Shown: piece by piece, positions 1,251 to 48,921 of the stretch
Layout of the letters: the number at the start of each line of letters is the position of its first letter
Position numbering within the stretch: the first letter of the stretch is position 1
Program-made: the position numbers and the translations under genes
Virus record (IMG/VR): IMGVR_UViG_3300044846_005229
Location: 215,340-279,339 of that record
Reading direction: 5' to 3' (one strand)
Length of the DNA: 64,000 nt
Notes under the pieces: model-generated
What the model was told of the DNA's origin: nothing
Seen by the model: the letters and a program-made list of their open reading frames with translations, nothing else
Databases searched by the model: none

Positions 1251-2744
1251 TCAAGAGAGCAACCGACTCCTGATATTAGCCAGACTGTTTACATCTTCGC
1301 CATATACGCGACCGTCCAGGAAAACCGTTTTTAATTCCCCTAGTCCTTCCTGCTCATGGGTTTGCTGCTCATGGAGGACAAAGTCATCTCCTTCTTTTTC
1401 AACGCGGAGTAAACCCTTGGCCGATTTTTTCGTTCCAGAGTCAGTGATTGGATCCTTAAAAATTTCTACACCTTGACCATCAACTTGACCCCAAGTGGAT
1501 TTGAAAGCCATGCCAAAAGTATCGCGAGTGTGATATTGATAGGAATAAGATCCTACACCAAGAACAACGTTGCTGCTGGCCCACTTGTTACGGTTCATAT
1601 TTTCCAAGATAGAAAAAGCCCGTTGCAAGGTAATGGAATCACCGTAAATCAGACCAACCCTCGGATTAATTTCCCTGAAGCCACTTTCATTCACGGTGCC
1701 GCCAAACTCATCCCAAAGCAATTGCAGAGATCCCTTATGGGCAGGGCTGCCAGGTTCGGCATCAGGATTACCGCAAAGGATATGTTCGGGGTTACCGCTA
1801 TCACCCCTGAGTACAACCTTAGCAAGTCCCATAGCGTCCGGTTGACGGCTTAAGATAACATCCTTAAGTTGAACAGCAATTTTAGTCAAGACATTCCAGT
1901 AATCCCAAGTGTCACTAACAATACTGACGATACCACTGGGGTACCTGTCTTGAATAAGGCGCCGGTAAGTTTCCAACTCATTATCTTTACCGCCAATGCA
2001 CATTACACTGTGCTCAGTAGCAGGGACACCGCCCGCGATAAACTCAGAGCCAACATCATAGTAGTCTTCTAGGAAGTCGATCGAGGGGATATTGTCCGAA
2101 CCTGTAAACGAGAAAAGATGACCAATACCATGGGCAGCCCCATCATGAATTCCACCAACACCCCTCAACGAAAAGTCGTGCGCCTGGAAATTAACAAAGC
2201 TGGGGTCAGCTCCCGTCAATGCAGCATAACGATCTAGCAAACGACGAAACTCGTAAGCAACGGTAGCGATATTGACTGTTTTCCAAATTTCCGACGAAAG
2301 GGCAGTTTCCACGTAGTTAGTCAACCAGTAGAATTCGTGAATAGTATTCTGGATCGTCAAAAATGGTACTCTCAAATTGACTCGGCTTCCCTCAGGCAAA
2401 GCTTTAACCCTAAGGGGCATATAGCCGAGGTCATGTAAATCAGCCAGGTGATCTACTCCAACCGCCCCTGGGCCGAGGGCCGAATCCATACGCCTACGGT
2501 ACTTTTCAAGTACTTGATCCTTTGGTTTATTGAAAAAGGAGTCATTCCACAAGTCTTGAAGATACCATTTAAGAGTGCCTTGAATCCCTGCCACTACGAT
2601 TTTATGATCGAAATCCGGTAGCATCTTAGCCAGACGGTCAGATCTAGCGGTTTGATTGGTGTATACGATTTCGGTTTTGTCAGGGTATTGGTAGATATGC
2701 CCAGTCTTGTAAAAGTCGGTTGCGTGGGGGGCAAAAAGTTTCAT
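1251..2744 (-). CDS. nadV: nicotinamide phosphoribosyltransferase-family protein (NAMPT-like; probable Namat of NARP1)
   Basis: TDFYKTGH, HDFSLRG, PATEHSVM, SIVSDTWD, RGDSG, GLIYGDSIT, KDPITDSGTKKSAKG motifs; adjacent to Prs-like gene. Confidence 0.93.
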   Translation of the reverse strand: MKLFAPHATDFYKTGHIYQYPDKTEIVYTNQTARSDRLAKMLPDFDHKIVVAGIQGTLKWYLQDLWNDSFFNKPKDQVLEKYRRRMDSALGPGAVGVDHLADLHDLGYMPLRVKALPEGSRVNLRVPFLTIQNTIHEFYWLTNYVETALSSEIWKTVNIATVAYEFRRLLDRYAALTGADPSFVNFQAHDFSLRGVGGIHDGAAHGIGHLFSFTGSDNIPSIDFLEDYYDVGSEFIAGGVPATEHSVMCIGGKDNELETYRRLIQDRYPSGIVSIVSDTWDYWNVLTKIAVQLKDVILSRQPDAMGLAKVVLRGDSGNPEHILCGNPDAEPGSPAHKGSLQLLWDEFGGTVNESGFREINPRVGLIYGDSITLQRAFSILENMNRNKWASSNVVLGVGSYSYQYHTRDTFGMAFKSTWGQVDGQGVEIFKDPITDSGTKKSAKGLLRVEKEGDDFVLHEQQTHEQEGLGELKTVFLDGRVYGEDVNSLANIRSRLLS

Positions 2745-3917: not shown

Positions 3918-4766
3918 TCAGAACTTAAAGCCGAGACCGATAGTGCCGACGGGGGCGTAAGCCGTTCCAGCAACACCGTTTTCCTGAGTCGGGAACTTCA
4001 GATCAGCGAAACCAACCAGGGACGATGTAAAAGCACGCTCCACACCGGCAACGAATACAAACTGAGAACCTTGACCAATGCTGGTCTGGTAGTTGGCTTC
4101 CCCATCGTTCGTCAATGCCCATTGGCCACCGGCACCGAGGTAGAGGTTAGTGCCACTAACGAAAGTACCACCGATGGTACGCCCAGCCAGGGAAACGTCT
4201 ACGGTCCCCAGAACACCGATAGCAGAACCAATTTGGCTATCAGGGCCCGCAGCGAAGTTCACATAGGGACGAGCTGAGATGGCAGTACCGTAGACTTCAG
4301 CCACTGGGAAACGTCCCTGAAGGGTACCACCAGCGATAGTACGATTGTTGCTATAGGTGTCGCTGCTAACGCCTTGGCGATTCAGGTTAACGCCTACGCC
4401 AACATAATTACCAACTCCAACTGCTTTCCGAGTTGCCGTATCTTCAAGGGCAGAAATACGAGCGTTGGTAACTGCGATAGCCGCACGAGCCTCGTCTGCA
4501 ATGCGACGATCTGCTTGGCTCAGTGTGTCATAAACCCGGTCAACGCAAGCACTCATGAGAGCTACGCTTTCGTAGCGGGTGGTGGGATTGCTACCACGGA
4601 AAGTGCCATCGGGATAACCAGCAACGCAACCATACTTTTCAGCTAGGTTTTGAAGGGCACCGTAGGCCCAATTTGTAGGAGAAGAGTCCGTAAACCGTGG
4701 TGCGGCGAACGCAGGGGTGGTAAAGGAAGCGATAGCTGCTAATGTAGCAATAATTCGATTTTTCAT
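3918..4766 (-). CDS. SLH-domain outer-membrane porin-like protein
   Basis: signal peptide (PAFA), SLH motif FTD..PTNWAYGAL..L.EKYGCVAGYPDGTFRG...TRYE, amphipathic beta-strands, C-terminal GLGFKF. Confidence 0.85.
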   Translation of the reverse strand: MKNRIIATLAAIASFTTPAFAAPRFTDSSPTNWAYGALQNLAEKYGCVAGYPDGTFRGSNPTTRYESVALMSACVDRVYDTLSQADRRIADEARAAIAVTNARISALEDTATRKAVGVGNYVGVGVNLNRQGVSSDTYSNNRTIAGGTLQGRFPVAEVYGTAISARPYVNFAAGPDSQIGSAIGVLGTVDVSLAGRTIGGTFVSGTNLYLGAGGQWALTNDGEANYQTSIGQGSQFVFVAGVERAFTSSLVGFADLKFPTQENGVAGTAYAPVGTIGLGFKF

Positions 4767-10579: not shown

Positions 10580-10805
10580 AAGGGGACCGAAGCCCCCCGC
10601 AATGAGTCAGAATGCTATCGCTCAAACGGCGACGGCAGTCCTCTCGAATTTGACGATTTTGTTAGCGTCTATGTTGTGCTTATGCAAGCGGCTTTCGGTA
10701 ATTGGCTTGCTGTCGGTCGATTCCAGAGCGGACCCTCGAAAGGGAAATGGATCCGGGGCGATTCGAACGCCCGTGTCGCGCAGTAGTGACAACTACCTAC
10801 ACCCA
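10580..10805 (-). ncRNA. ssrA: circularly permuted (two-piece) tmRNA
   Basis: 3' acceptor/T-arm GGGCGTTCGAATCGCCCCGGATCCA (to 10748) precedes 5' acceptor GGGTCCG (10735); G3:U70 pair; tag frame 10666-10622 reads ANKIVKFERTAVAV*. Confidence 0.92.
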
Positions 10806-11323
10806 GTTTTTAGCCGTATGGTAGGGCTTTAACAATTATTACCCGTTACAGTTAAAAGTCGATGTAATCTCATACTGCCTAAGTAAGTTAAACAACTCAG
10901 TTTGAAGGTCTTCGAAGCCGCCCACAAGTTGATCCTGAGTGACCGCATAGCAAGGACCCACTTTAGAGCCAGCCCAAGGTATGATTTGTTTGTGCTCTAG
11001 AATCTTGTTCCTGTACTTAAGAAGTAGGGAGTTAATCCCGGAGGCTAGCTGAACTTTATCGGATAGAACTATTTGTTTTAACATGGTGGGGGGGGTGTTG
11101 GTTACGGTGAGGGGTGGCAATAAAAGGTGATGTTGCAGGAGGGGTTGGGTCCGGGCATCGCCTGCGGCGCCCGTCCCTGGTCGGGGGCTAACGCCCCCTC
11201 CCGAAATTTTCGGGCCATACCCCTATTGTAGCGCGTTTACTAGGGGAGGCAAGGCGGCTAACCCCCCCACAACCCAGCAAGCTGCCTGGAGTCCACCCAT
11301 TTAACATATATGGCTAGGCAGGT

Positions 11324-26835: not shown

Positions 26836-26949
26836 CCGATAGAATTTTGCTAACCTAAGTTAACAATGCACAGGTATTAATACCTGAGGGGCTATCTCCC
26901 AAAGTCTCAAGAATTCTTGAGACGCTTTTTACCCAGATATTCCGGGCAC
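26836..26949. repeat. 114-bp exact repeat, copy 1
   Basis: identical to 42372-42485. Confidence 0.95.
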
Positions 26950-28627: not shown

Positions 28628-29860
28628 TCACTCAATCCAATGGGGGACCACTCGGCTTGTGTCAAGGACAATCGGCCGGTCATGATCCCTAATGATGATG
28701 CCTGCGGGTTCATTACCGACAACCCAAGACCCGATGACTGCCCGATTGTCGCCGTCCTGGAAAAGATCGGCTTTTTTCTGGTAGATGCGGGGTCCATCAT
28801 ACATGCCAGTAGTTCTAGAGGTTACCACACCTGACTCAACAATGTCAATGTTGGCCCCTTCCCGGCTCAGCATAGGCTTTACCACGTAGGATGTGGGATT
28901 TAGTTTTCCGGATGAAAACGCCTCTAATTGTTCTGGTGTTCCATGCTCCCGGAGATTCAGCCAATCCCAATCATCCACCGGGATGCCACCCTCAGTGAAA
29001 CTGGCTGGAAGGATGTTAGGGTGGTCTGGAAACATCTCATGGAGAATAGGCAAGATGCCCTTATTGCTCAGGATTGATTTCCAGATTGGCTCTACAATTC
29101 CAGAGGAACCTTTAATAGTGTGTAATCCAAACTCATCTCCCATCATCCATTCCCATGGGTATAGCTTGAACCAATACTTAATCGGATTCTCTTGGATGTC
29201 AGTGAAGTTTTCTCCATTCCAGCCAATGTCCCCCAAATCAATAAAATCTGTAGTTAACCCAGCCTGAGTAGCTAAATCTTGGAAGTAAACCAGGGTCTGA
29301 TACTCCTCTAGGCTTTCAGAATAACCTGCAAATACAAACTTGTGGCCGAACGGTACCCTTTGCCTGATTTCCTTGAATTGGTCAATAAGTTTTTCATGCA
29401 AAGAGTTGAATTGGTCTTTTCCGGGCTTAACATCCTGCAACCAGAACCATTGCATTAGCGCCGATTCAATAACCATTGTAGGAGTGTCTGCATTGTATTC
29501 CAACATCTTAGGTTGGCTGTCCCCCGTATATGCAAAGTCAAACCTGCCATATAAAGATGGGTCGCATTGCTTCCAGGATTTGGAAATCGCGGAGTGGTAT
29601 GCTGAGGGAATTCCGATTTTTGCCATTAACTCTGAATCACCCACAACCTTGTCCACAGCATCGAGGCACCGGAGTTGGCATTCCCGTGTGGCATCTTCAA
29701 GTTCGTCAATTTCAGCCATAGAAAACTCATAGGCCACAGATTCATCCCAATAGGTTCCCTCCCCATCTTTTGATGAGGTACCCGATGTGTGGTAGGTGAA
29801 CCCAATCTCTTCAGCTTTTTCTTGCCAATTAACGCGAGGTTGTAGGGTGTGACGTTTCAT
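28628..29860 (-). CDS. glutathionylspermidine synthase-family ATP-grasp ligase (YgiC-like)
   Basis: YWDES, LYGRFDFAY, KMLEYNADTPT, DQFNSLHE, FKLYPWEW, EPIWKSILSNK, KPMLSREGAN, IGSWVV. Confidence 0.93.
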   Translation of the reverse strand: MKRHTLQPRVNWQEKAEEIGFTYHTSGTSSKDGEGTYWDESVAYEFSMAEIDELEDATRECQLRCLDAVDKVVGDSELMAKIGIPSAYHSAISKSWKQCDPSLYGRFDFAYTGDSQPKMLEYNADTPTMVIESALMQWFWLQDVKPGKDQFNSLHEKLIDQFKEIRQRVPFGHKFVFAGYSESLEEYQTLVYFQDLATQAGLTTDFIDLGDIGWNGENFTDIQENPIKYWFKLYPWEWMMGDEFGLHTIKGSSGIVEPIWKSILSNKGILPILHEMFPDHPNILPASFTEGGIPVDDWDWLNLREHGTPEQLEAFSSGKLNPTSYVVKPMLSREGANIDIVESGVVTSRTTGMYDGPRIYQKKADLFQDGDNRAVIGSWVVGNEPAGIIIRDHDRPIVLDTSRVVPHWIE

Positions 29861-42343: not shown

Positions 42344-42575
42344 TGGCGGACCGGAGAATTGAACTCCTATTCCGATAGAATTTTGCTAACCTAAGTTAAC
42401 AATGCACAGGTATTAATACCTGAGGGGCTATCTCCCAAAGTCTCAAGAATTCTTGAGACGCTTTTTACCCAGATATTCCGGGCACCATGTTGGCAGTAGA
42501 TGCTAAGCTACTGGCCTTAGTATTAAAACTGAGGACTTAGACCTGTGCGTCTTACCTGGATTTCTCCAACCCGCA
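42344..42575 (-). ncRNA. expanded tRNA-like RNA A
   Basis: GCGGGTT/GGTCCGC acceptor, GGAG-TTCAATT-CTCC T-arm, about 190-nt structured interior with GCACAGGT/ACCTGTGC helix. Confidence 0.6.
42372..42485. repeat. 114-bp exact repeat, copy 2
   Basis: identical to 26836-26949. Confidence 0.95.
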
Positions 42576-42606
42576 GTGAGGTAATGAACTGAAGAAGCAA
42601 CCTTCA

Positions 42607-42723
42607 GACTTAAGGGAACCTTAAGATTTGAGTTATGGCCAGAAGGTCATACAAGATGGTTGGGTTTCTATAGCAAAGAAATTTGTAAATTGCTGAACCA
42701 TCTTAGTTTTGTGCTAGCAAAAC
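42607..42723 (-). ncRNA. CAGCAA hairpin RNA motif, copy 1
   Basis: AAGATGGTT-CAGCAAT...TTTCT-TTGCTAT-AGAAA...AACCATCTT; similar to 43144-43262. Confidence 0.65.
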
Positions 42724-42724
42724 A

Positions 42725-42796
42725 TGGCGGAAGCTGGATTTGCACCAGCGATCTTCAGGGTATGAGCCTGACGAGATTCTACTTCTCTACTCCGCG
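42725..42796 (-). tRNA. trnM: tRNA-Met(CAT), initiator-like
   Basis: TCAGG-CT-CAT-AC-CCTGA, C1 unpaired. Confidence 0.85.
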
Positions 42797-42824
42797 TTAT
42801 TGTACCGTGTGTTAATTACGGTAA

Positions 42825-42895
42825 TCGGGATGGAAGGTACTGCCCCTTCTATTCTGCTTCCCAAAAGCAGTGTGATACTTTTCTACTACACCCCG
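42825..42895 (-). tRNA. trnP: tRNA-Pro(TGG), atypical T-loop
   Basis: CTGCT-TT-TGG-GA-AGCAG; C1-G72, A73; T-loop GGCAGTA. Confidence 0.8.
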
Positions 42896-42919
42896 ATGTC
42901 TACCTAATGTTACCCTTCC

Positions 42920-42973
42920 GGTTCCATGCCCATGCTTGCAAAACAGGTGCCCCCCCAATTGAGCTATGACCCC
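42920..42973 (-). pseudogene. degenerate tRNA-Ala(TGC), 3' half lost
   Basis: GGGGTCATAGCTCAATTGG...CCTGT-TT-TGC-AA with no T-arm or 3' acceptor strand. Confidence 0.65.
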
Positions 42974-42977
42974 GTGT

Positions 42978-43118
42978 TCATCTAATGCTTTCTAACATAT
43001 AGGTTTTACCCTTGAGTGTGACAGTGAGCGAAGGGTTAGCTATGGCAGCAGCCAGTTGCTTCCTTGCCTTAGGGTCGTTTAATATCCCCTTAATTAACCT
43101 GGTTGGTTCTACTTTCAT
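42978..43118 (-). CDS. 46 aa ORF inside tRNA array
   Basis: own translation MKVEPTRLIKGILNDPKARKQLAAAIANPSLTVTLKGKTYMLESIR*. Confidence 0.45.
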   Translation of the reverse strand: MKVEPTRLIKGILNDPKARKQLAAAIANPSLTVTLKGKTYMLESIR

Positions 43119-43143
43119 TTTATCAGGGTTTGTGTGGCCATCC

Positions 43144-43262
43144 GACTTGAGGGAACTTTAAGATTTGAGTTATGGCCAAAAAGTCATACAAGATGGTTGT
43201 TTTTTCTACCAAAAAGAAAGTTTTTAGATTGCTGAACCATCTTAGTTTTGCTATCGCAAAAC
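43144..43262 (-). ncRNA. CAGCAA hairpin RNA motif, copy 2
   Basis: AAGATGGTT-CAGCAAT...TTTCT-TTTTGGT-AGAAA...AACCATCTT. Confidence 0.65.
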
Positions 43263-43264
43263 AA

Positions 43265-43341
43265 CCGGAAATCGCAGAATCGAACTGCGGACCTCTCGTT
43301 TTTCAGACGAGCGCTCTTCACCAAGACTGAGCTAATTCCCG
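43265..43341 (-). tRNA. trnF: tRNA-Phe(GAA)
   Basis: CTCGT-CT-GAA-AA-ACGAG. Confidence 0.9.
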
Positions 43342-43402
43342 TTTTTTACCCGGGTTTGATCTCCCGGTAGTTATTACCCCCAGACTTTCACCTGAGGGCA
43401 AA

Positions 43403-43474
43403 TTGAACGCACGGGACTCGAACCCGCATCCTCCACCAACCCGGTGGCGCTCTACCACTTGGAGCTAACGTCCA
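43403..43474 (-). tRNA. tRNA-like gene with shrunken anticodon loop (isotype undetermined)
   Basis: intact acceptor, D and T arms; CCACC-GGGTT-GGTGG has only a 5-nt loop. Confidence 0.65.
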
Positions 43475-43609
43475 AATCCCTTTGAATAAACCTGCAAGTT
43501 ACTTTTAAGGGCCGGGTATTACAATTGCAGTTGCTTTCCCCTCGGGACTTTCACCCGTATATGCAACTCTGTTAATTCGTGGTTGCTAACGATTTCCCGT
43601 TTCCGGAAA

Positions 43610-43680
43610 CGGGGTATAGGGGACTCGAACCCCCCTTTGCGAGTAGACAGCCCGCAGCCTTCCCTGACGGCAAATACCCT
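43610..43680 (-). tRNA. trnD: tRNA-Asp(GTC)
   Basis: GCGGG-CT-GTC-TA-CTCGC, G73; A1.C72 mismatch. Confidence 0.8.
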
Positions 43681-43746
43681 ATTTGCCCCTGCCCTGGCTC
43701 ACTTGCTTGTTCCGAAGAACCGCACTAGCAAACCTGCTGGAGGCAA

Positions 43747-43819
43747 CACCCAATGAGGGAGTCGAACCCCCGTATTCTAATTCGTAGCCAGACGCTTTAA
43801 TCCACTAAGCTAATTGGGC
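43747..43819 (-). tRNA. trnR: tRNA-Arg(ACG)
   Basis: TCTGG-CT-ACG-AA-TTAGA. Confidence 0.9.
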
Positions 43820-43874
43820 AGTTTTCTGCCGAAAACTTTCAGAGTGTTCTCGTAAGTTTCTCGTTAGAGAAACA

Positions 43875-43955
43875 TGGCCCCCAAGGGACTTGAACCCTTA
43901 CAGCTTTCGCTGGGAGTTTTTAAGACTCCTGTGTCTACCCTTCCACCAGAAGGCC
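43875..43955 (-). tRNA. trnL: tRNA-Leu(TAA), second divergent copy
   Basis: GGAGT-CT-TAA-AA-ACTCC, long variable arm. Confidence 0.9.
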
Positions 43956-44014
43956 ATTTGGTGTTAAATTTTCAAGTTGCTGGTTGAGAGTTTTGACTCT
44001 GCCAACCTGTCACT

Positions 44015-44058
44015 ATTATAGCGTCTCTGCGGGCAGAGACAAGGGCGGTTAACCGAAC
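44015..44058 (-). promoter_or_regulatory. promoter with upstream CGGTTAACCG palindrome
   Basis: GTTCGGTTAACCGCCC-TTGTCT-16-TATAAT. Confidence 0.7.
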
Positions 44059-44128
44059 GTTTGCTGAGCAAACGACACCGGAGAGATGGCCCCCCGAGAT
44101 TTATCTTAAGTTTCCTCGTCAGAGAAAA

Positions 44129-44200
44129 AGCGGGTAGGGGTAGTCGAAACCCCGTCTACTGCTTGGAAGGCAGTCATATTGGCCGTTATACGATACCCGC
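44129..44200 (-). tRNA. trnG: tRNA-Gly(TCC)
   Basis: ACTGC-CT-TCC-AA-GCAGT, U73. Confidence 0.9.
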
Positions 44201-44240
44201 ATTTTGTATGTTGCTTCGGTAATGTTTACGTCAGCAAAAG

Positions 44241-44313
44241 GGTGATGAACGGGAATCGGACCCGCGCTAGTCTGGCTCACAACCAGATGCCTTACCACTT
44301 GGCTACCACCACC
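44241..44313 (-). tRNA. trnH: tRNA-His(GTG) with encoded G-1
   Basis: TCTGG-TT-GTG-AG-CCAGA; G-1/C73. Confidence 0.9.
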
Positions 44314-44411
44314 ATGGTGCCCTAGGTTTGTATCCAACGGTAATGAAACTTTAAGGTGATGGTCTCCCATTTCCACCCTAAGTCATATTACCCAGACTCA
44401 ACCGTAAGCAA

Positions 44412-44567
44412 TGCCCCAACCAGGGGTTCGAACCTGGAGGCAAAAGAATCTATTTTCAATAAGAAGGTTTGATTTCAAGGCCACACCTTATCAACGTAGG
44501 TTCAATACGCCTATCAGCATTTACTCGTAGATTTGAACCCTGATGCCTGTTCCAACTACTTTGGGAC
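44412..44567 (-). ncRNA. expanded tRNA-like RNA B
   Basis: GTCCCAA/TTGGGGC-A acceptor, CCAGG-TTCGAAC T-arm, interior closed by AGGCA/TGCCT with GGTTCAA/TTGAACC and further hairpins. Confidence 0.6.
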
Positions 44568-44604
44568 TTTTTTCGTGTTTTGAACATTCCTAACAAAGTT
44601 AGGC

Positions 44605-44671
44605 TAGATGATTGTTTTTCCAATTTCGAAGGAGTTGATCGCTGAATCATCTAAGTTTGCAACTGCAAAAC
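44605..44671 (-). ncRNA. CAGCAA hairpin RNA motif, copy 3 (divergent)
   Basis: AGATGATT-CAGCGAT...AATCATCT, compensatory change versus copies 1-2. Confidence 0.55.
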
Positions 44672-44680
44672 AATGGCAAA

Positions 44681-44761
44681 TGCCCACCGGGGGACTCGAA
44701 CCCCCACGCCTTTCGGCACATGGGCCTAAACCATGCGTGACTTCCATTCCACCAGGCAGGC
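44681..44761 (-). tRNA. trnL: tRNA-Leu(TAG)
   Basis: CATGG-TT-TAG-GC-CCATG, long variable arm. Confidence 0.9.
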
Positions 44762-44792
44762 TTTTTTCTAGGGGTTTTTCAAAGAAAAACAT

Positions 44793-44948
44793 TGAAGTGG
44801 AGAGGCTTGAACTCTCAATGTTAAGATTGCGTCTGGCTGCTACTTAACAGGTGGTTTCAACCATGAGCCAGGAAGTTGCTATTAGCATTTACAACCCCAT
44901 CCGTATCGGCTGATTCCACACCCCCGTATACCAGTTCCGGCACACTTC
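44793..44948 (-). ncRNA. expanded tRNA-like RNA C
   Basis: GAAGTG/CACTTC acceptor, type-II D-arm CCG-GAACTGGTATA-CGG, T-arm GAGAG-TTCAAGC-CTCTC, extended anticodon and variable arms. Confidence 0.7.
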
Positions 44949-44967
44949 TTCTTTCCTTAGAAAGAAA

Positions 44968-45048
44968 CTGGAGCGGAAGGACTCGAACCTTCATTGTCTT
45001 TCGACACTCGTTAACAGCGAGTTGCATTTCCAATTATGCTACACCCCA
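44968..45048 (-). tRNA. trnN: tRNA-Asn(GTT) with long variable arm
   Basis: ACTCG-CT-GTT-AA-CGAGT then GTC-GAAA-GAC; G73. Confidence 0.85.
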
Positions 45049-45209
45049 TTACACCCTGCGTTACGGCAGGGGACAGTAGGAAACACTCTGGGGTCGCATT
45101 GCGTCCCGGTGTGAGTACGAATCGTTACTTAAACCGGTTATTACTGACCCTTAGCTGCAAACCGGAAACCTGTGCTAAAGGACTTTTTCCTTTCCCGTTA
45201 GGGAAAGAA

Positions 45210-45283
45210 TGGGAGCGGTCGGGATCGAACCGACGACCTATCGGTTATCAACCGAGTGCTCTAGACCGCTGAGCTACGCTCCC
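45210..45283 (-). tRNA. trnI: tRNA-Ile(GAT)
   Basis: TCGG-TT-GAT-AA-CCGA. Confidence 0.9.
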
Positions 45284-45489
45284 TTGGTGTTAAATTGTCT
45301 AGTTTCTGTCAATGGCGTAACCAGTGGCGTTACTACCAGCGACACCCTTAGTATAGGGTCTTGCCCCGGTAAAGTAAAGGACGGTTTGCCGCCCCCACCT
45401 TACGGACTTTTTCGCGTTTTTCGCTTAGCGAAAGTTGCCTTGCGATTAAACCTTACCAGGGTTAGCTGGTGGGTTAATCTTAGAGCAAA

Positions 45490-46159: not shown

Positions 46160-46933
46160 CTAAGCAACAAAATCCCCTAGCTGAATCCTGCCCTCCGGCA
46201 CCCATTCTTTGACAATGGCCCTAATTATGGGCTTATTCGGTCTATACTGGGGGGGAATATCCGACATGTCCAAACTCTCGGGTCCAACCAAAACCCGTTG
46301 ACGCTTAATGTAGGTCCCATGGGTGAATGCCCTAGGGAGTTCTTCCCATGGTTTCCCTATTTGTTTCAGCAAGGTTTTCATTTCTTCGCAAGTTACCCCT
46401 TGAAGGTCCTTATGTGAAAATAAACTCTGGGCATACATTGACACTGAGTTTTTCGTAGCGTCATTGAGCCTCCATAGGAAGTTCTTATAGACGTATTCCA
46501 AATTAGGGACATTCCATACCCTGCAGTCAAATACGGGGTACTGGCCTACCTTTTCAGGGAGATATTCAGGTAAGTTTCCTGTGAAAAATGCCCCCGCTGT
46601 CGAGGCCAGTATTGATGTCAGCTTCTGGTATTTGCCCCTAAATAGAAATTCCCTATTGGAGTAATTCCGCTTGTCAAGATGCCAATACAAAGTTATCTCA
46701 TCGGATTGGCAATACCCTAGTAAAGCCTCACTTTCGGTAACAAGGTGCCTTGTGGTAGCAACCATTAGGTTAACGAATCGCTCATCAAACGGCTTTTGGA
46801 GGTTATGGGTAAACGAACTAAAGGTCCTCCCATCGATGCGGCACATTAAAGGGCGGAAGGGATTTGCAGTCCTGCCTGCCTCTTTTTGCTCTTGTTCTTT
46901 TAGGGTGTCGCCCAGGGTGTCAGTGTGTGGCAT
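46160..46933 (-). CDS. Thg1-like protein (tRNA-His guanylyltransferase / 3'-5' polymerase family)
   Basis: RIDGRTFSSFT..LQKPFD, YCQSDEITL, FRGKYQKLTS, FDCRV, WRLNDA.KNSV. Confidence 0.92.
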   Translation of the reverse strand: MPHTDTLGDTLKEQEQKEAGRTANPFRPLMCRIDGRTFSSFTHNLQKPFDERFVNLMVATTRHLVTESEALLGYCQSDEITLYWHLDKRNYSNREFLFRGKYQKLTSILASTAGAFFTGNLPEYLPEKVGQYPVFDCRVWNVPNLEYVYKNFLWRLNDATKNSVSMYAQSLFSHKDLQGVTCEEMKTLLKQIGKPWEELPRAFTHGTYIKRQRVLVGPESLDMSDIPPQYRPNKPIIRAIVKEWVPEGRIQLGDFVA

Positions 46934-47793: not shown

Positions 47794-48921
47794 TTAAAAT
47801 CCCCCCTTCTCAGTCTCCCTGAGGGCCACTCCGACCGGGAAAATCGGGACACCACTTGCACTCAGTTCTTGATACCGGACTGTAAGGTACTTTGTTGTTG
47901 ACAATATGTCCTCACGATTTTCGTAAAGAGACCTGCGGTATTCCATATCGCCTTCTGGCACGACAGTAAAGGTTTCAGTCTCAGTGGCTTTACATACAAA
48001 GATCGAAGCACTTTTGAACCGGCCACCCCCTTCGATAATGTCAAGGACTTCAAACTCACCGTCCACGAAATCCTTCACCTTTTGCAACTGGTTGTTCCGG
48101 TGTCCGATATCATACCCGCCAAGGTCGAACCTGACCATCGAACCCTCGTACCCGGAGTCAACGAATTGACTGTGGTGAAAAATAACGTCAGATGGGGACT
48201 CCACCTCGGCAGTAGGGGTTAGTATAATGTGTGATTCTCCCAAGGGAACCAGACTCTTCAAAATTTCAAACCGTTCGGAGAAAGGTCTCGAAGGATCAAC
48301 AATGTCGTAGACCCAGTATACAAGCGTGGGGGACAACTCGGGACGAAACTTCTTGATCGCAGTCATTGTCTTTTGTAACAGAGGGTTTCCCGGCAGAATG
48401 AGTTCCCCGTCCAGGATCACCCCTGGTGGCAATTTTCTGATTTCCTCTTTAATATGTGCGATACACTCCGGAATAATCAACTTGCCACCGCGAGACCACC
48501 CCCCACTATTGTCGAGTAGCATCCGTTGTCCGTTCAGTTTAGGTTGCACGAATGCGGGCCAGGTTACCTTGTGGCCACGGTCCGAAAACTTATGGGCTAG
48601 CATTGGTAAGGGCAAAACCTCGGGCTCCTGCCCGATTTCAGCATATCCTTTATCAATTTGCTTTTTAAAGTCGCGCTCAATTTCTAGGTGGGCTTGTTGC
48701 TCCGCTGTGGTTGCGTTGGCCCGTCCGACATTTTTGGGATACACACAGTAAGGATCACTAAATTGCAAGGCTGAGCTTGAGCCATCATTATTTGTTTGCC
48801 AATAGGACGATTGTGTAAACCACCTATCCACGCTACTAAAAAGGACGTGCCCTTGCCAGAACTTGGCTTTACCGGTGCGGGTTGTTGACTGGAGGACTGG
48901 GGTGCTGTGTACGATTTTCAT
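47794..48921 (-). CDS. ATP-dependent DNA ligase with WGR-like N-terminal domain
   Basis: PMLA, QPKLNGQR (motif I), LDGEL, YDIV, EGSMVR, LQKVK, TVRYQELS..GVPIFP. Confidence 0.92.
   Translation of the reverse strand: MKIVHSTPVLQSTTRTGKAKFWQGHVLFSSVDRWFTQSSYWQTNNDGSSSALQFSDPYCVYPKNVGRANATTAEQQAHLEIERDFKKQIDKGYAEIGQEPEVLPLPMLAHKFSDRGHKVTWPAFVQPKLNGQRMLLDNSGGWSRGGKLIIPECIAHIKEEIRKLPPGVILDGELILPGNPLLQKTMTAIKKFRPELSPTLVYWVYDIVDPSRPFSERFEILKSLVPLGESHIILTPTAEVESPSDVIFHHSQFVDSGYEGSMVRFDLGGYDIGHRNNQLQKVKDFVDGEFEVLDIIEGGGRFKSASIFVCKATETETFTVVPEGDMEYRRSLYENREDILSTTKYLTVRYQELSASGVPIFPVGVALRETEKGGF

What the first reader, a model, noticed from the sequence alone, without database searches (positions are those of the whole stretch)
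42607..44671. Three-copy CAGCAA RNA motif displaying anticodon stem-loop mimics
Seen: each copy starts within 10 nt downstream of a tRNA (Met, Phe, Leu). The layout is a GTTTTGC hairpin, then an 8-9 bp helix AGATGGTT/AACCATCT (compensated to AGATGATT/AATCATCT in copy 3), an unpaired CAGC(A/G)AT, and an inner stem-loop. In copies 1 and 2 the inner element is a 5-bp stem with a 7-nt loop TT-GCT-AT or TT-TTG-GT, which is anticodon-arm geometry with U33 and purine 37 for Ser and Gln. Neither isotype has a canonical tRNA in this window. Inference: anticodon decoys or sponges for host anticodon nucleases or modification enzymes. They complement the expanded tRNAs, which keep the elbow but lose the anticodon.
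Basis: partly seen in the sequence, partly recalled or inferred. Interest (0 to 1): 0.82.

Follow-up and report, generated by a model that had tools for sequence, protein, structure and literature searches.

The report
Cyanophage Y-RNA-like modules in tRNA array
The three repeats are real, conserved small structured RNAs in a giant cyanophage's tRNA cluster, and related phages almost always encode them beside a Ro60-like RNA-binding protein gene, so they are most likely a new kind of "Y RNA" partner for that protein and not free-standing anticodon decoys.

Summary
Three about 54-nt modules lie on the minus strand (42652-42705, 43189-43244, 44604-44654), each behind a tRNA and a trailer hairpin. 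Each has a 9-10 bp helix, single-stranded CAGC(A/G)AU, a weak inner hairpin and an A-rich return strand.

No Rfam family matches. The module is nevertheless widespread: 83 exact-pattern matches in 58 viral loci, over 130 distinct members, and cultured Synechococcus phages B3 and B23. The helix covaries strongly (98% of cells paired, 6 of 9 pairs with double changes).

The decisive finding is genomic coupling to a 490-aa DUF2828/DUF7788 protein. Its AlphaFold model matches Ro60 best. In 53 of 58 loci found through that protein, modules lie just before or after the gene, and all 155 hits are on the gene's strand. The window's own genome carries this gene about 55 kb away. Homologous phage proteins elsewhere sit beside YrlA Y RNAs.

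The same module is also inserted into tRNA-like genes next to their anticodon arm.

The anticodon-arm look holds for copies 1-2 and their orthologues but not family-wide, and the missing-isotype argument fails.

Best reading: Y-RNA-like partners of a phage Ro60 homologue. Protein binding is inferred, not shown.

The parts
42725..42796 (-). tRNA-Met(cat), with no encoded CCA. Copy 1 lies in its 3' trailer.
   Evidence: ARAGORN; Rfam tRNA 53.6 bits
42706..42723 (-). Trailer hairpin GUUUUGCUAGCACAAAAC. This is a generic feature of the array's tRNA trailers.
   Evidence: sequence; fold
42652..42705 (-). CAGCAAU module copy 1: helix 42704-42696 / 42661-42653, single-stranded CAGCAAU 42695-42689, inner hairpin UUUCU-UUGCUAU-AGAAA 42681-42665.
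   Evidence: R1 61.5 bits; R2 60.3 bits; fold
42604..42651 (-). Two further hairpins behind copy 1 (AUGACC..GGCCAU and CUUAAGG..CCUUAAG). The first is conserved with compensated changes in the window's clade.
   Evidence: alignment; fold; relatives
43265..43341 (-). tRNA-Phe(gaa). Copy 2 lies in its 3' trailer.
43245..43262 (-). Trailer hairpin GUUUUGCGAUAGCAAAAC.
43189..43244 (-). CAGCAAU module copy 2: CAGCAAU 43234-43228, inner hairpin UUUCU-UUUUGGU-AGAAA 43219-43203.
   Evidence: R1 70.1 bits; R2 68.6 bits
43143..43188 (-). Hairpins behind copy 2, homologous to those behind copy 1.
   Evidence: alignment
44681..44761 (-). tRNA-Leu(tag). Copy 3 lies in its 3' trailer.
44655..44671 (-). Trailer hairpin GUUUUGCAGUUGCAAAC, starting 10 nt after the tRNA.
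44604..44654 (-). CAGCGAU module copy 3: compensated helix AGAUGAUU/AAUCAUCU, CAGCGAU 44644-44638, inner element UCC-UUCGAAAUU-GGA (9-nt loop).
   Evidence: R1 60.3 bits; R2 58.7 bits
44589..44603 (-). Hairpin CCUAAC-UUU-GUUAGG abutting copy 3.
   Evidence: fold

Best explanation
The three copies belong to a previously uncatalogued family of about 50-60-nt structured RNA modules of freshwater T4-like and jumbo cyanophages.

Each module has four parts:
- a sequence-constrained 9-10 bp helix (5'-N-AGAUGRUU ... AAYCAUCU-N-3')
- an invariant single-stranded CAGCAAU immediately 3' of the helix's 5' strand
- a variable hairpin
- an A-rich return strand

I propose that the helix plus CAGCAAU is the binding handle for a phage-encoded Ro60 homologue. 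This is the DUF2828/DUF7788 protein, with a TROVE-like helical ring domain plus a vWA domain, encoded about 55 kb away in this same genome. On this reading the modules are Y-RNA analogues.

They are transcribed as part of tRNA polycistrons, and in relatives also from their own sigma70-type promoters. They would be released by the enzymes that trim the flanking tRNAs.

The variable hairpin would be the displayed, effector-facing part. In copies 1-2 it looks like an anticodon arm. In relatives a whole tRNA body takes this place. This parallels the tRNA-like domain of bacterial YrlA.

Copies in the 5' UTR of the Ro-like gene, ending right at its Shine-Dalgarno sequence, suggest that the protein also represses its own translation.

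Shown here: the structure, conservation, strandedness, transcript context, genomic coupling to the gene, and the Ro60-like fold. Inferred: physical binding, processing, and the downstream role. That role is probably surveillance, turnover or protection of tRNA-like RNAs during infection, by analogy with Ro60-Y RNA-PNPase complexes.
For: Structure:
- On 101 distinct sequences, 98.4% of helix cells are paired, 6 of 9 pairs show double changes, and 118 cells are compensated. None of 500 shuffles reaches this, and slid controls pair only 30-48%.
- Many other compensated helices occur (AGAUAGUU, AGGUAAUU, AGUUAAUU, AGAUCAGU and more).
- CAGCAAU columns are 91-100% invariant.

Distribution:
- 83 exact-pattern matches in 58 viral loci and 193 model hits.
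- Cultured Synechococcus phages B3 and B23 carry it.
- Only 2 convincing hits occur among 185,579 cellular genomes.

Coupling to the protein gene:
- About 35 of the motif loci encode a 55-70% identical 490-aa protein next to the modules.
- In the reverse test, 58 loci were found through the protein, and 53 have modules. All 155 hits are on the gene strand, either within about 130 nt upstream of the start or just downstream of the stop. This includes 21 of 26 contigs that were not selected through the motif.
- A cyanobacterial chromosome (Nodosilinea) keeps the gene, the module and a tRNA-like stub together among ordinary cellular genes.
- The window's own genome has the gene with a 5'UTR module, two downstream modules and module-bearing tRNA-like genes (L116).

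The protein:
- Pfam gives DUF2828 plus DUF7788 and a weak VWA_2 hit. PHROG 850 is named 'RNA-binding protein'.
- The five best PDB matches of the AlphaFold2 model (pLDDT 70) are all Ro60/Rsr over about 500 columns, E 1.8e-6 to 1.5e-4.
- Homologues in mycobacteriophages (41% identity) are annotated 'Ro-like RNA binding protein'.
- YrlA (RF02553) hits, below the gathering threshold, lie directly beside the homologous gene in a mycobacteriophage and an Enterococcus phage.

Literature:
- Y RNAs lie within 4 kb of Ro60 on the same strand, and Ro60 contacts mainly the 5' strand (PMC4201824).
- A phage Ro60 binds phage Y-like RNAs and host PNPase (PMC12135203).
- The Listeria phage homologue was called Rsr-like, with abundant ncRNAs nearby (PMC12282133).

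RNA-level evidence:
- Lake metatranscriptome assemblies contain the region.
- In relatives, promoters sit 7-9 nt upstream of the helix.
Against: - No binding data exist. The coupling could partly reflect that the Ro-like gene simply sits inside the tRNA/ncRNA cluster.
- The three window copies are 55 kb from the gene, not adjacent to it.
- The known Ro-binding motifs (GGUCCGA, GNCGAAN0-1G) are absent, and the Rfam YrlA and Y_RNA models do not match the modules.
- At about 54 nt the modules are shorter than known Y RNAs (80-130 nt).
- The structural match to Ro60 has a modest TM-score (0.33-0.43) from a medium-confidence model, and a sequence-profile search of the PDB found nothing.
- The metatranscriptome evidence consists of unstranded contigs of 90-95% relatives and cannot exclude DNA carry-over.
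Confidence: 0.6

Rival explanations
1. Anticodon stem-loop decoys. The inner hairpin mimics an anticodon arm and soaks up host anticodon nucleases or modification enzymes. The helix and CAGCAAU are only a scaffold.
For: - Copies 1 and 2 and many relatives can form a 5-bp stem with a 7-nt loop U-U-NNN-R-N.
- The triplet changes between orthologues at one syntenic position while the geometry is kept.
- In module-bearing tRNA-like genes the equivalent hairpin is the anticodon arm. Near-identical genes differ only in the triplet: GCA, CCA, GUA.
- Thg1-like and ligase genes flank the array, which suggests pressure on tRNA integrity.
Against: - Only 46 of 121 distinct members have 7-nt loops, the range is 3-13 nt, and U33 is present in 30 of those 46.
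- Copy 3 and its orthologues have 8-9-nt loops.
- The hairpin is thermodynamically marginal and is not the minimum-energy fold.
- The strongly conserved part is the helix plus CAGCAAU.
- Relatives hold canonical tRNA-Gln and tRNA-Ser alongside the UUG and GCU modules.
- The idea does not explain the 5'UTR copies or the coupling to the Ro-like gene.
Confidence: 0.15
2. A protein-independent RNA processing or stability element. It would be a punctuation signal recognised by host RNases (RNase P as a minihelix-like substrate, RNase E, RNase III). Or it would be a 5'-terminal hairpin that protects processed transcripts. It sits near the Ro-like gene only because that gene lies in the tRNA cluster.
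For: - The modules always lie at junctions: 0-2 nt after tRNA or tRNA-like 3' ends, 3-10 nt before the next tRNA, 7-9 nt after -10 boxes, or directly before a Shine-Dalgarno sequence.
- Some members contain a T-arm, giving a minihelix-like shape.
Against: - A generic hairpin would not need an invariant 7-nt single strand and a sequence-constrained helix.
- The same module is inserted inside tRNA-like genes, where cleavage would destroy them.
- The gene, module and tRNA-like stub moved together into a cyanobacterial chromosome that has no tRNA array there.
- The other tRNAs of this array manage with plain trailer hairpins.
Confidence: 0.15
3. Functional armless mini-tRNAs. The helix would be the acceptor stem, CAGCAAU a D-arm replacement, and the inner hairpin the anticodon arm. 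They would supply Ser and Gln decoding.
For: - The layout resembles armless mitochondrial tRNAs.
- The triplets fit the usual rule for position 37: G after anticodons ending in G, A after those ending in A or U.
Against: - No tRNA model recognises them.
- The helix is 9-10 bp, not 7.
- Loops are often not 7 nt.
- No discriminator or CCA logic is evident.
- Bacterial EF-Tu and ribosomes need the tRNA elbow (established knowledge).
- Relatives already hold the cognate canonical tRNAs.
Confidence: 0.03
4. Decayed spacer, a segmental duplication remnant, or a small mobile repeat with no RNA function.
For: - Copies 1 and 2 share about 120 nt including their flanks.
- The modules occur at many kinds of site, like a dispersed repeat.
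Against: - Compensatory changes at six helix pairs occur across more than 100 distinct sequences.
- Strand asymmetry is strict: 59-69 bits against 11-15 bits, and 155 of 155 hits lie on the gene strand.
- Conservation spans protein identities down to about 35-60%.
Confidence: 0.04

Closest known systems
YrlA / bacterial and phage Y RNAs bound by Ro60 (Rsr) (Rfam RF02553; Chen et al. 2014, PMC4201824)
   Same: - Small structured RNAs encoded next to, and on the same strand as, a Ro60-type (TROVE plus vWA) protein gene, often in several copies.
- A stem formed by the RNA's 5' and 3' ends carries a short conserved sequence on the 5' strand.
- A second part mimics tRNA.
- Homologues of the cyanophage protein in mycobacteriophage and Enterococcus phage have YrlA-like hits beside them.
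   Different: - The conserved element is CAGCAAU, not GNCGAAN0-1G.
- The YrlA model does not match.
- Standalone modules are about 54 nt and display only a hairpin.
- In the tRNA-borne form the handle is a capped hairpin inserted at the anticodon stem of an otherwise normal cloverleaf with open acceptor ends. This is the circular permutation of YrlA, whose ends lie in the Ro-binding stem and whose acceptor arm is closed.
- Copies are also scattered through the main tRNA array and in the gene's 5' UTR.
Thermus phage phiLo Ro60 with Yrl1/Yrl2 (PMC12135203)
   Same: A phage-encoded Ro60 homologue with phage-encoded Y-like RNAs next to its gene, proposed to recruit host PNPase.
   Different: - The RNA is different: it has a CGAA motif.
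- phiLo Ro60 was recognised as Ro60 by its authors (PMC12135203), whereas the cyanophage protein matches only DUF2828/DUF7788 in Pfam and is recognisable as Ro60 only by fold.
- No tRNA-array context is described.
tRNA anticodon stem-loop, and armless mitochondrial tRNAs
   Same: Copies 1 and 2 can form a 5-bp stem with a 7-nt loop having U at 33 and a purine at 37. The equivalent hairpin in module-bearing tRNA-like genes is their anticodon arm.
   Different: - The geometry is not conserved across the family.
- No tRNA detector recognises the modules.
- There is no T or D arm.
T4 stable RNAs C and D (species 1 and 2) in the T4 tRNA cluster
   Same: Small stable RNAs of unknown function co-transcribed with phage tRNAs in a T4-type phage. 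This is recalled from the literature and serves only as a lead.
   Different: Not compared here. No sequence or structure test was run.

Membership tests
Y RNA (Ro60 partner RNAs, including YrlA) | Encoded close to a Ro60 orthologue on the same strand | tested here: met
   53 of 58 protein-anchored loci have modules within about 130 nt upstream or just downstream of the gene, and all 155 hits are on the gene strand. The three window copies themselves are 55 kb from the gene in the same genome.
Y RNA (Ro60 partner RNAs, including YrlA) | The partner protein is a Ro60 (TROVE ring plus vWA) | tested here: met
   The top five Foldseek matches are all Ro60/Rsr over the full length, E 1.8e-6 to 1.5e-4. 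The match is by fold only: TM is 0.33-0.43, the Pfam TROVE model does not hit, and there is a weak VWA_2 hit.
Y RNA (Ro60 partner RNAs, including YrlA) | A stem formed by the 5' and 3' ends with a conserved Ro-binding sequence (GGUCCGA or GNCGAAN0-1G) | tested here: not met
   The terminal stem is present and covaries. But the conserved sequence is AGAUGRUU-CAGCAAU, and no CGAA-type motif is present.
Y RNA (Ro60 partner RNAs, including YrlA) | Matches the Rfam YrlA or Y_RNA covariance models | tested here: not met
   No hit at E<=10 in the window region or at E<=1 in L023, and none in L116 or L068.
Y RNA (Ro60 partner RNAs, including YrlA) | Physically bound by Ro60 | not testable with these tools
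   Needs EMSA, RIP or CLIP.
YrlA subtype | tRNA-like domain (T and D arms) | tested here: not met
   The three window copies have none. Relatives have T-arm-bearing modules and whole tRNA-like genes carrying the module.
Anticodon stem-loop mimic | 5-bp stem, 7-nt loop, U33 and R37 in the window copies | tested here: inconclusive
   Possible for copies 1 and 2 (UUUCU/AGAAA with UUGCUAU or UUUUGGU) but not the minimum-energy fold. Copy 3 has a 3-bp stem and a 9-nt loop.
Anticodon stem-loop mimic | Geometry conserved in homologues | tested here: not met
   Loops range from 3 to 13 nt. Seven nt is the commonest length but holds in only 46 of 121, and U33 in 30 of those 46. The geometry is conserved only within subclades.
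tRNA | Cloverleaf recognised by tRNA models | tested here: not met
   ARAGORN and Rfam tRNA do not call the modules.
Intrinsic terminator | GC-rich hairpin followed by a U run | tested here: not met
   No terminator-like site at any copy on the minus strand. The helix is followed by UGUAUGA or AGCCUAA.
Small ORF | Conserved start codon and reading frame | tested here: not met
   The AUG inside AGAUGG is lost in many compensated variants (AGAUAGUU, AGGUAAUU, AGUUAAUU).

The most novel reading that the evidence does not exclude
A phage Ro60-like ribonucleoprotein carries exchangeable tRNA-type displays on one common handle. The display may be an anticodon-arm-like hairpin, a T-arm, or a complete cloverleaf with the handle inserted in its anticodon stem. 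The complex would act as programmable bait. It would either capture or neutralise host enzymes that attack tRNA anticodon arms, or escort damaged phage tRNAs to repair or decay, with Thg1-like, ligase and host PNPase as possible partners. It would also make these cyanophages the first case of a multi-member, anticodon-diversified Y RNA set.
Probability: 0.2. Interest if true: 0.85.

Novelty: new variant of a known kind. Interest (0 to 1): 0.62.

Why it matters
Ro60-Y RNA complexes are conserved from bacteria to humans, but their RNA partners are known in few lineages and their roles in phages are barely explored.

This finding has four consequences:
- It assigns a likely RNA partner to a very widespread phage protein family. 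DUF2828 / PHROG 850 matches 705 cultured phage records, most annotated as hypothetical.
- It defines a new, easily searchable RNA module.
- It accounts for part of the 'tRNA-Pseudo'/'tRNA-OTHER' annotations in cyanophage genomes.
- It shows that a Y-RNA handle can be transplanted into tRNA scaffolds and spread through tRNA arrays.

It also turns a long-standing question, what phage tRNA clusters carry besides tRNAs, into something directly testable in a culturable system: Synechococcus phages B3 and B23.

Tried and rejected
Known RNA families:
- Rfam at gathering and at E<=10 gave no family on the modules.

Other readings of the sequence:
- A coding reading (the AUG in AGAUGG opens short ORFs) was rejected because compensated variants lose the AUG.
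- The terminator reading was rejected.
- Hammerhead, HDV, pistol, k-turn, T-loop and BHB-intron readings were considered by eye. Each was dropped because its signature nucleotides are absent. None was run as a formal test.
- A pseudoknot between CAGCAAU and the loop is possible only in GCU-type loops such as copy 1, so it is not a family feature.

Literature:
- Searches for tRNA-like or phage tRNA-array motifs and for the literal strings CAGCAAU and TTCAGCAAT returned only unrelated papers.
- A search for 'DUF2828' gave five irrelevant papers.

Protein searches:
- A sequence-profile search of the PDB found nothing. Only the fold search did.
That row was dropped and the job re-sent.
- A translation of L116:2501-3995 failed because the tblastn end overshot the ORF. 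The intact ORF ends at 3967.

Limits of the models and data:
- Models R1 and R2 do not find the more divergent modules of phage BUCT-ZZ01 (CUGCAAU, other helices), which were seen only by eye.
- The metatranscriptome contigs give presence only, with no strand and no ends.

Not done:
- Comparison with T4 rnaC and rnaD.
- A scan of metagenome contigs.


Full report
WHAT IS THERE. All genes and tRNAs of the window are on the minus strand. Read on that strand, the finding is accurate.

Behind tRNA-Met (42725-42796), tRNA-Phe (43265-43341) and tRNA-Leu-tag (44681-44761) there is first a trailer hairpin of the GUUUUGC...GCAAAAC type. Then comes a module of 51-56 nt, at 42705->42652, 43244->43189 and 44654->44604.

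Each module has four parts:
- a 9-10 bp helix, (U/A)AGAUG(G/A)UU ... AA(C/U)CAUCU(U/A)
- an unpaired CAGC(A/G)AU directly after the 5' strand
- an interior that can form a weak hairpin
- an A-rich return strand

Copies 1 and 2 can form UUUCU/AGAAA with the loops UUGCUAU and UUUUGGU. Copy 3 offers only a 3-bp stem with a 9-nt loop.

Two corrections apply:
- The trailer hairpin is a general feature of this array. Nearly every tRNA is followed by a GTTT..AAAC hairpin, and none has an encoded CCA.
- RNAfold does not select the 5-bp/7-nt inner hairpin as the best fold for any copy.

A filter-free covariance-model scan finds exactly these three copies in the 64 kb. They score 59-69 bits on the minus strand and 11-15 bits on the plus strand. 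No terminator-like site coincides with them. They are not ORFs, because compensated variants elsewhere lose the AUG.

IT IS A REAL, WIDESPREAD RNA FAMILY. Rfam 15 has nothing for it, either at gathering thresholds or at E<=10.

An exact pattern (AGATGRTTCAGCRAT, a gap, then AAYCATCT) hits 58 stretches of IMG/VR, giving 83 matches of which 51 are distinct. In all but one obvious chance hit, the R and Y positions are compensated, although the pattern did not require this.

A model built from these (R1) finds 193 hits in the fetched loci. On 101 distinct sequences:
- the helix is paired in 98.4% of cells
- 6 of 9 pairs show changes on both sides, covering 118 cells
- none of 500 shuffles reaches this
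- slid controls pair only 30-48%

A model-free search for any 8-bp helix in front of CAGCNA recovers many further compensated helices, including AGAUAGUU, AGGUGAUU, AGGUAAUU, AGUUAAUU, AGAUCAGU, AGAUGAGU and GAGAUUAUU.

The seven nucleotides CAGCAAU are 91-100% invariant.

Cultured phages carry the family. Synechococcus phages B3 and B23 (Kyanoviridae, 244 kb) have a promoter, two modules, a 110-nt gene annotated 'tRNA-OTHER / tRNA-Pseudo-GCA', another module, and then tRNA-Arg.

Among 185,579 cellular genomes the pattern gives only two convincing hits. One is a 3-kb contig, probably viral. The other lies in the chromosome of the cyanobacterium Nodosilinea.

TRANSCRIPT CONTEXT. The modules are found in five settings:
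- 0-2 nt after the 3' end of a tRNA or tRNA-like gene
- 3-10 nt before the next tRNA
- 7-9 nt downstream of strong sigma70-type -10 boxes, for example TTGACA-17-TATAAT in L003
- in tandem with another module
- immediately in front of a Shine-Dalgarno sequence and start codon

Lake and freshwater metatranscriptome assemblies contain 90-95% identical relatives of the array. One contig covering copy 1 and the element behind it has eleven-fold higher depth than its neighbour. These are unstranded contigs without end information.

THE SAME MODULE INSIDE tRNA-LIKE GENES. Many loci have 'expanded tRNAs' of 110-120 nt. The Rfam tRNA model matches them at 42-51 bits, with about 52 nt where 11 are expected.

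They read as follows: acceptor and D arm, an A-rich linker, a capped hairpin (..AUCUNG-loop-NAGAU..), 0-5 nt, CAGCAAU, a spacer, a 5-bp stem with a 7-nt loop, a variable region, the T arm and the acceptor.

The loops of that 7-nt hairpin mostly read N-U-NNN-R-A. Examples are UGG, UGU, GUU, UAC, UCC and GCC.

In one type the insertion splits the anticodon stem between positions 29 and 30. The flanking triplets covary there: ACG/CGU against ACA/UGU.

The junction AUCUAG-UUU-UAGAU is literally the 3' end of a standalone module fused to the 5' start of one. The embedded form is therefore a circular permutation of the standalone form. The standalone module's inner hairpin corresponds in position to an anticodon arm.

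Some standalone members carry a T-arm instead.

THE DECISIVE LINK: A Ro60-LIKE PROTEIN. In Nodosilinea the module lies directly behind a 496-aa ORF with Pfam DUF2828 plus DUF7788, among ordinary cellular genes.

tblastn shows 55-70% identical full-length homologues right beside the modules in about 35 of the viral loci. The gene whose 5' UTR holds a module is this gene.

As a reverse test I fetched loci through the protein (58 loci, of which 26 contigs were not selected through the motif) and scanned them with R1:
- There are 155 hits, all on the gene's strand.
- All lie either in the last ~130 nt before the start codon or just after the stop.
- 53 of 58 loci have at least one hit, including 21 of the 26 new contigs. 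R2 adds one more locus.
- The loci without hits encode the most divergent proteins (33-43% identity).

The window itself is the last 64 kb of a 279-kb contig. That genome has the intact gene about 55 kb from the three copies. With it come a CAGCUAU module in its 5' UTR, two modules downstream, and two module-bearing tRNA-like genes.

Evidence on the protein's identity:
- It has no PDB relative by sequence.
- Its AlphaFold2 model has pLDDT 70 and pTM 0.63, with a helical N-terminal domain and an alpha/beta C-terminal domain.
- The five best Foldseek PDB hits are Xenopus, Deinococcus and human Ro60 over about 500 columns, E 1.8e-6 to 1.5e-4, followed by vWA domains.
- The ESM Atlas links DUF2828 clusters with TROVE and VWA_2.
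- PHROG 850 is named 'RNA-binding protein'.
- Among 705 cultured phage records with a homologue, mycobacteriophage ones (41% identity) are annotated 'Ro-like RNA binding protein'.
- Next to the homologous gene in a mycobacteriophage and an Enterococcus phage, Rfam's YrlA model gives clear hits below its gathering threshold, at 39-48 bits.

This matches the literature:
- Y RNAs are encoded within 4 kb of Ro60 on the same strand, mimic tRNA, and are contacted mainly on the 5' strand of their stem (PMC4201824).
- A Thermus phage Ro60 binds phage Y-like RNAs and host PNPase (PMC12135203).
- The Listeria phage homologue was called Rsr-like, with abundant ncRNAs nearby (PMC12282133).

A more distant cyanophage, BUCT-ZZ01 (39% protein identity), has CUGCAAU and CAGCAAA variants with other helices around its gene. 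This hints that the RNA and the protein change together.

INTERPRETATION. The best-supported reading is that helix plus CAGCAAU is the handle for the phage Ro60 homologue. The modules would then be Y-RNA analogues. They occur free, in tandem, in the gene's own leader (probable autoregulation), or grafted into tRNA scaffolds. The three window copies would be trans-acting members placed in the main tRNA array and released by tRNA processing.

What the particle does is inferred only. By analogy it would be surveillance, decay or protection of structured or tRNA-like RNAs. This fits a genome that invests in more than 19 tRNAs in this window alone, a tmRNA, a Thg1-like enzyme and a ligase.

The anticodon-arm resemblance is real for copies 1 and 2 and their orthologues, and it has a homology argument behind it. 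At one syntenic site the triplets vary (GCU, GUU, UUG) while the geometry is kept.

It is not a property of the family, though. Loops range from 3 to 13 nt, 38% have 7 nt, and U33 is present in 65% of those. Copy 3 lacks it. The hairpin is thermodynamically marginal. The missing-isotype argument fails. A decoy function of the displayed hairpin remains possible, as the effector side of a Ro-type particle.

NOVELTY. Ro60-Y RNA pairs, including phage ones, are known. New here are:
- this RNA module, which is absent from Rfam and which none of the six literature searches turned up
- its permuted insertion into tRNA-like genes
- its dispersal through tRNA arrays and the gene's leader
- the assignment of an RNA partner to the cyanophage branch of DUF2828

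I file it as a new variant of a known kind. The confidence that it is a Ro-homologue partner RNA is 0.6.

Noticed in passing
window 46160-46933 (-) and 47794-48921 (-): A Thg1-like 3'-5' nucleotidyltransferase (PF04446, 2e-27) and an ATP-dependent ligase lie just upstream of the tRNA array. This suggests phage-encoded tRNA repair.
   Followed up: partly
window 42344-42600 (-): A structured element of about 260 nt lies directly behind copy 1. It ends in a T-arm plus an acceptor-like 3' end and a trailer hairpin. One metatranscriptome contig over 42489-42781 has depth 71, against 6.5 for its neighbour. Its identity is unknown and no Rfam family matches.
   Followed up: partly
window 26836-26949 and 42372-42485: An exact 114-nt repeat. 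The second copy lies inside the element behind module copy 1. The first lies between two tRNA-Leu genes.
   Followed up: no
window 44813-44946 (-): An element with a tRNA-like 3' part is 83% identical to an unannotated stretch of Synechococcus phage S-CRM01, which lies between that phage's tRNA-Val and tRNA-Ala. It has the highest RNA-contig depth in run X1. RNA-derived contigs of three runs join 44946 to 45133, skipping 186 nt that include tRNA-Asn, with CCAT between the two sides. This is either a variant genome or a processing product.
   Followed up: partly
window 10582-10844 (-): A permuted (two-piece) cyanobacterial-type tmRNA is encoded by the phage (72.8 bits).
   Followed up: no
window 42825-42895 (-): A tRNA found only by Rfam (36.6 bits) and missed by ARAGORN. 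Other oversized tRNA-like stretches lie in 44313-44560.
   Followed up: no
window 42700-45300 (-), all tRNA trailers: No tRNA of the array encodes CCA. Nearly every one is followed within 1-10 nt by a GTTT..AAAC hairpin, which may be a shared 3'-processing or protection signal.
   Followed up: partly
L001:10095-10240, L010 and L029 (same gene): Near-identical module-bearing tRNA-like genes differ only in the loop triplet: GCA, CCA, GUA. All three triplets read codons adjacent to stop codons.
   Followed up: no
L065 (Nodosilinea sp. chromosome CP089923.1, 3608001-3616000): A Ro-like gene, a module and a truncated tRNA-like stub sit in a cellular chromosome beside an AAA_33/KTI12-like kinase and a WCX-domain protein. 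This may be a captured RNA-repair or defence cassette.
   Followed up: partly
L128 (Listeria phage List-36, 102394-106842): A ROOL RNA (88 bits, truncated by the locus edge) and an RtcB-type 'tRNA splicing ligase' lie near that phage's Ro-like gene.
   Followed up: no
window 1251-2744 (-), 28628-29860 (-): Auxiliary metabolic genes: an NAPRTase-family enzyme and a glutathionylspermidine synthase.
   Followed up: no
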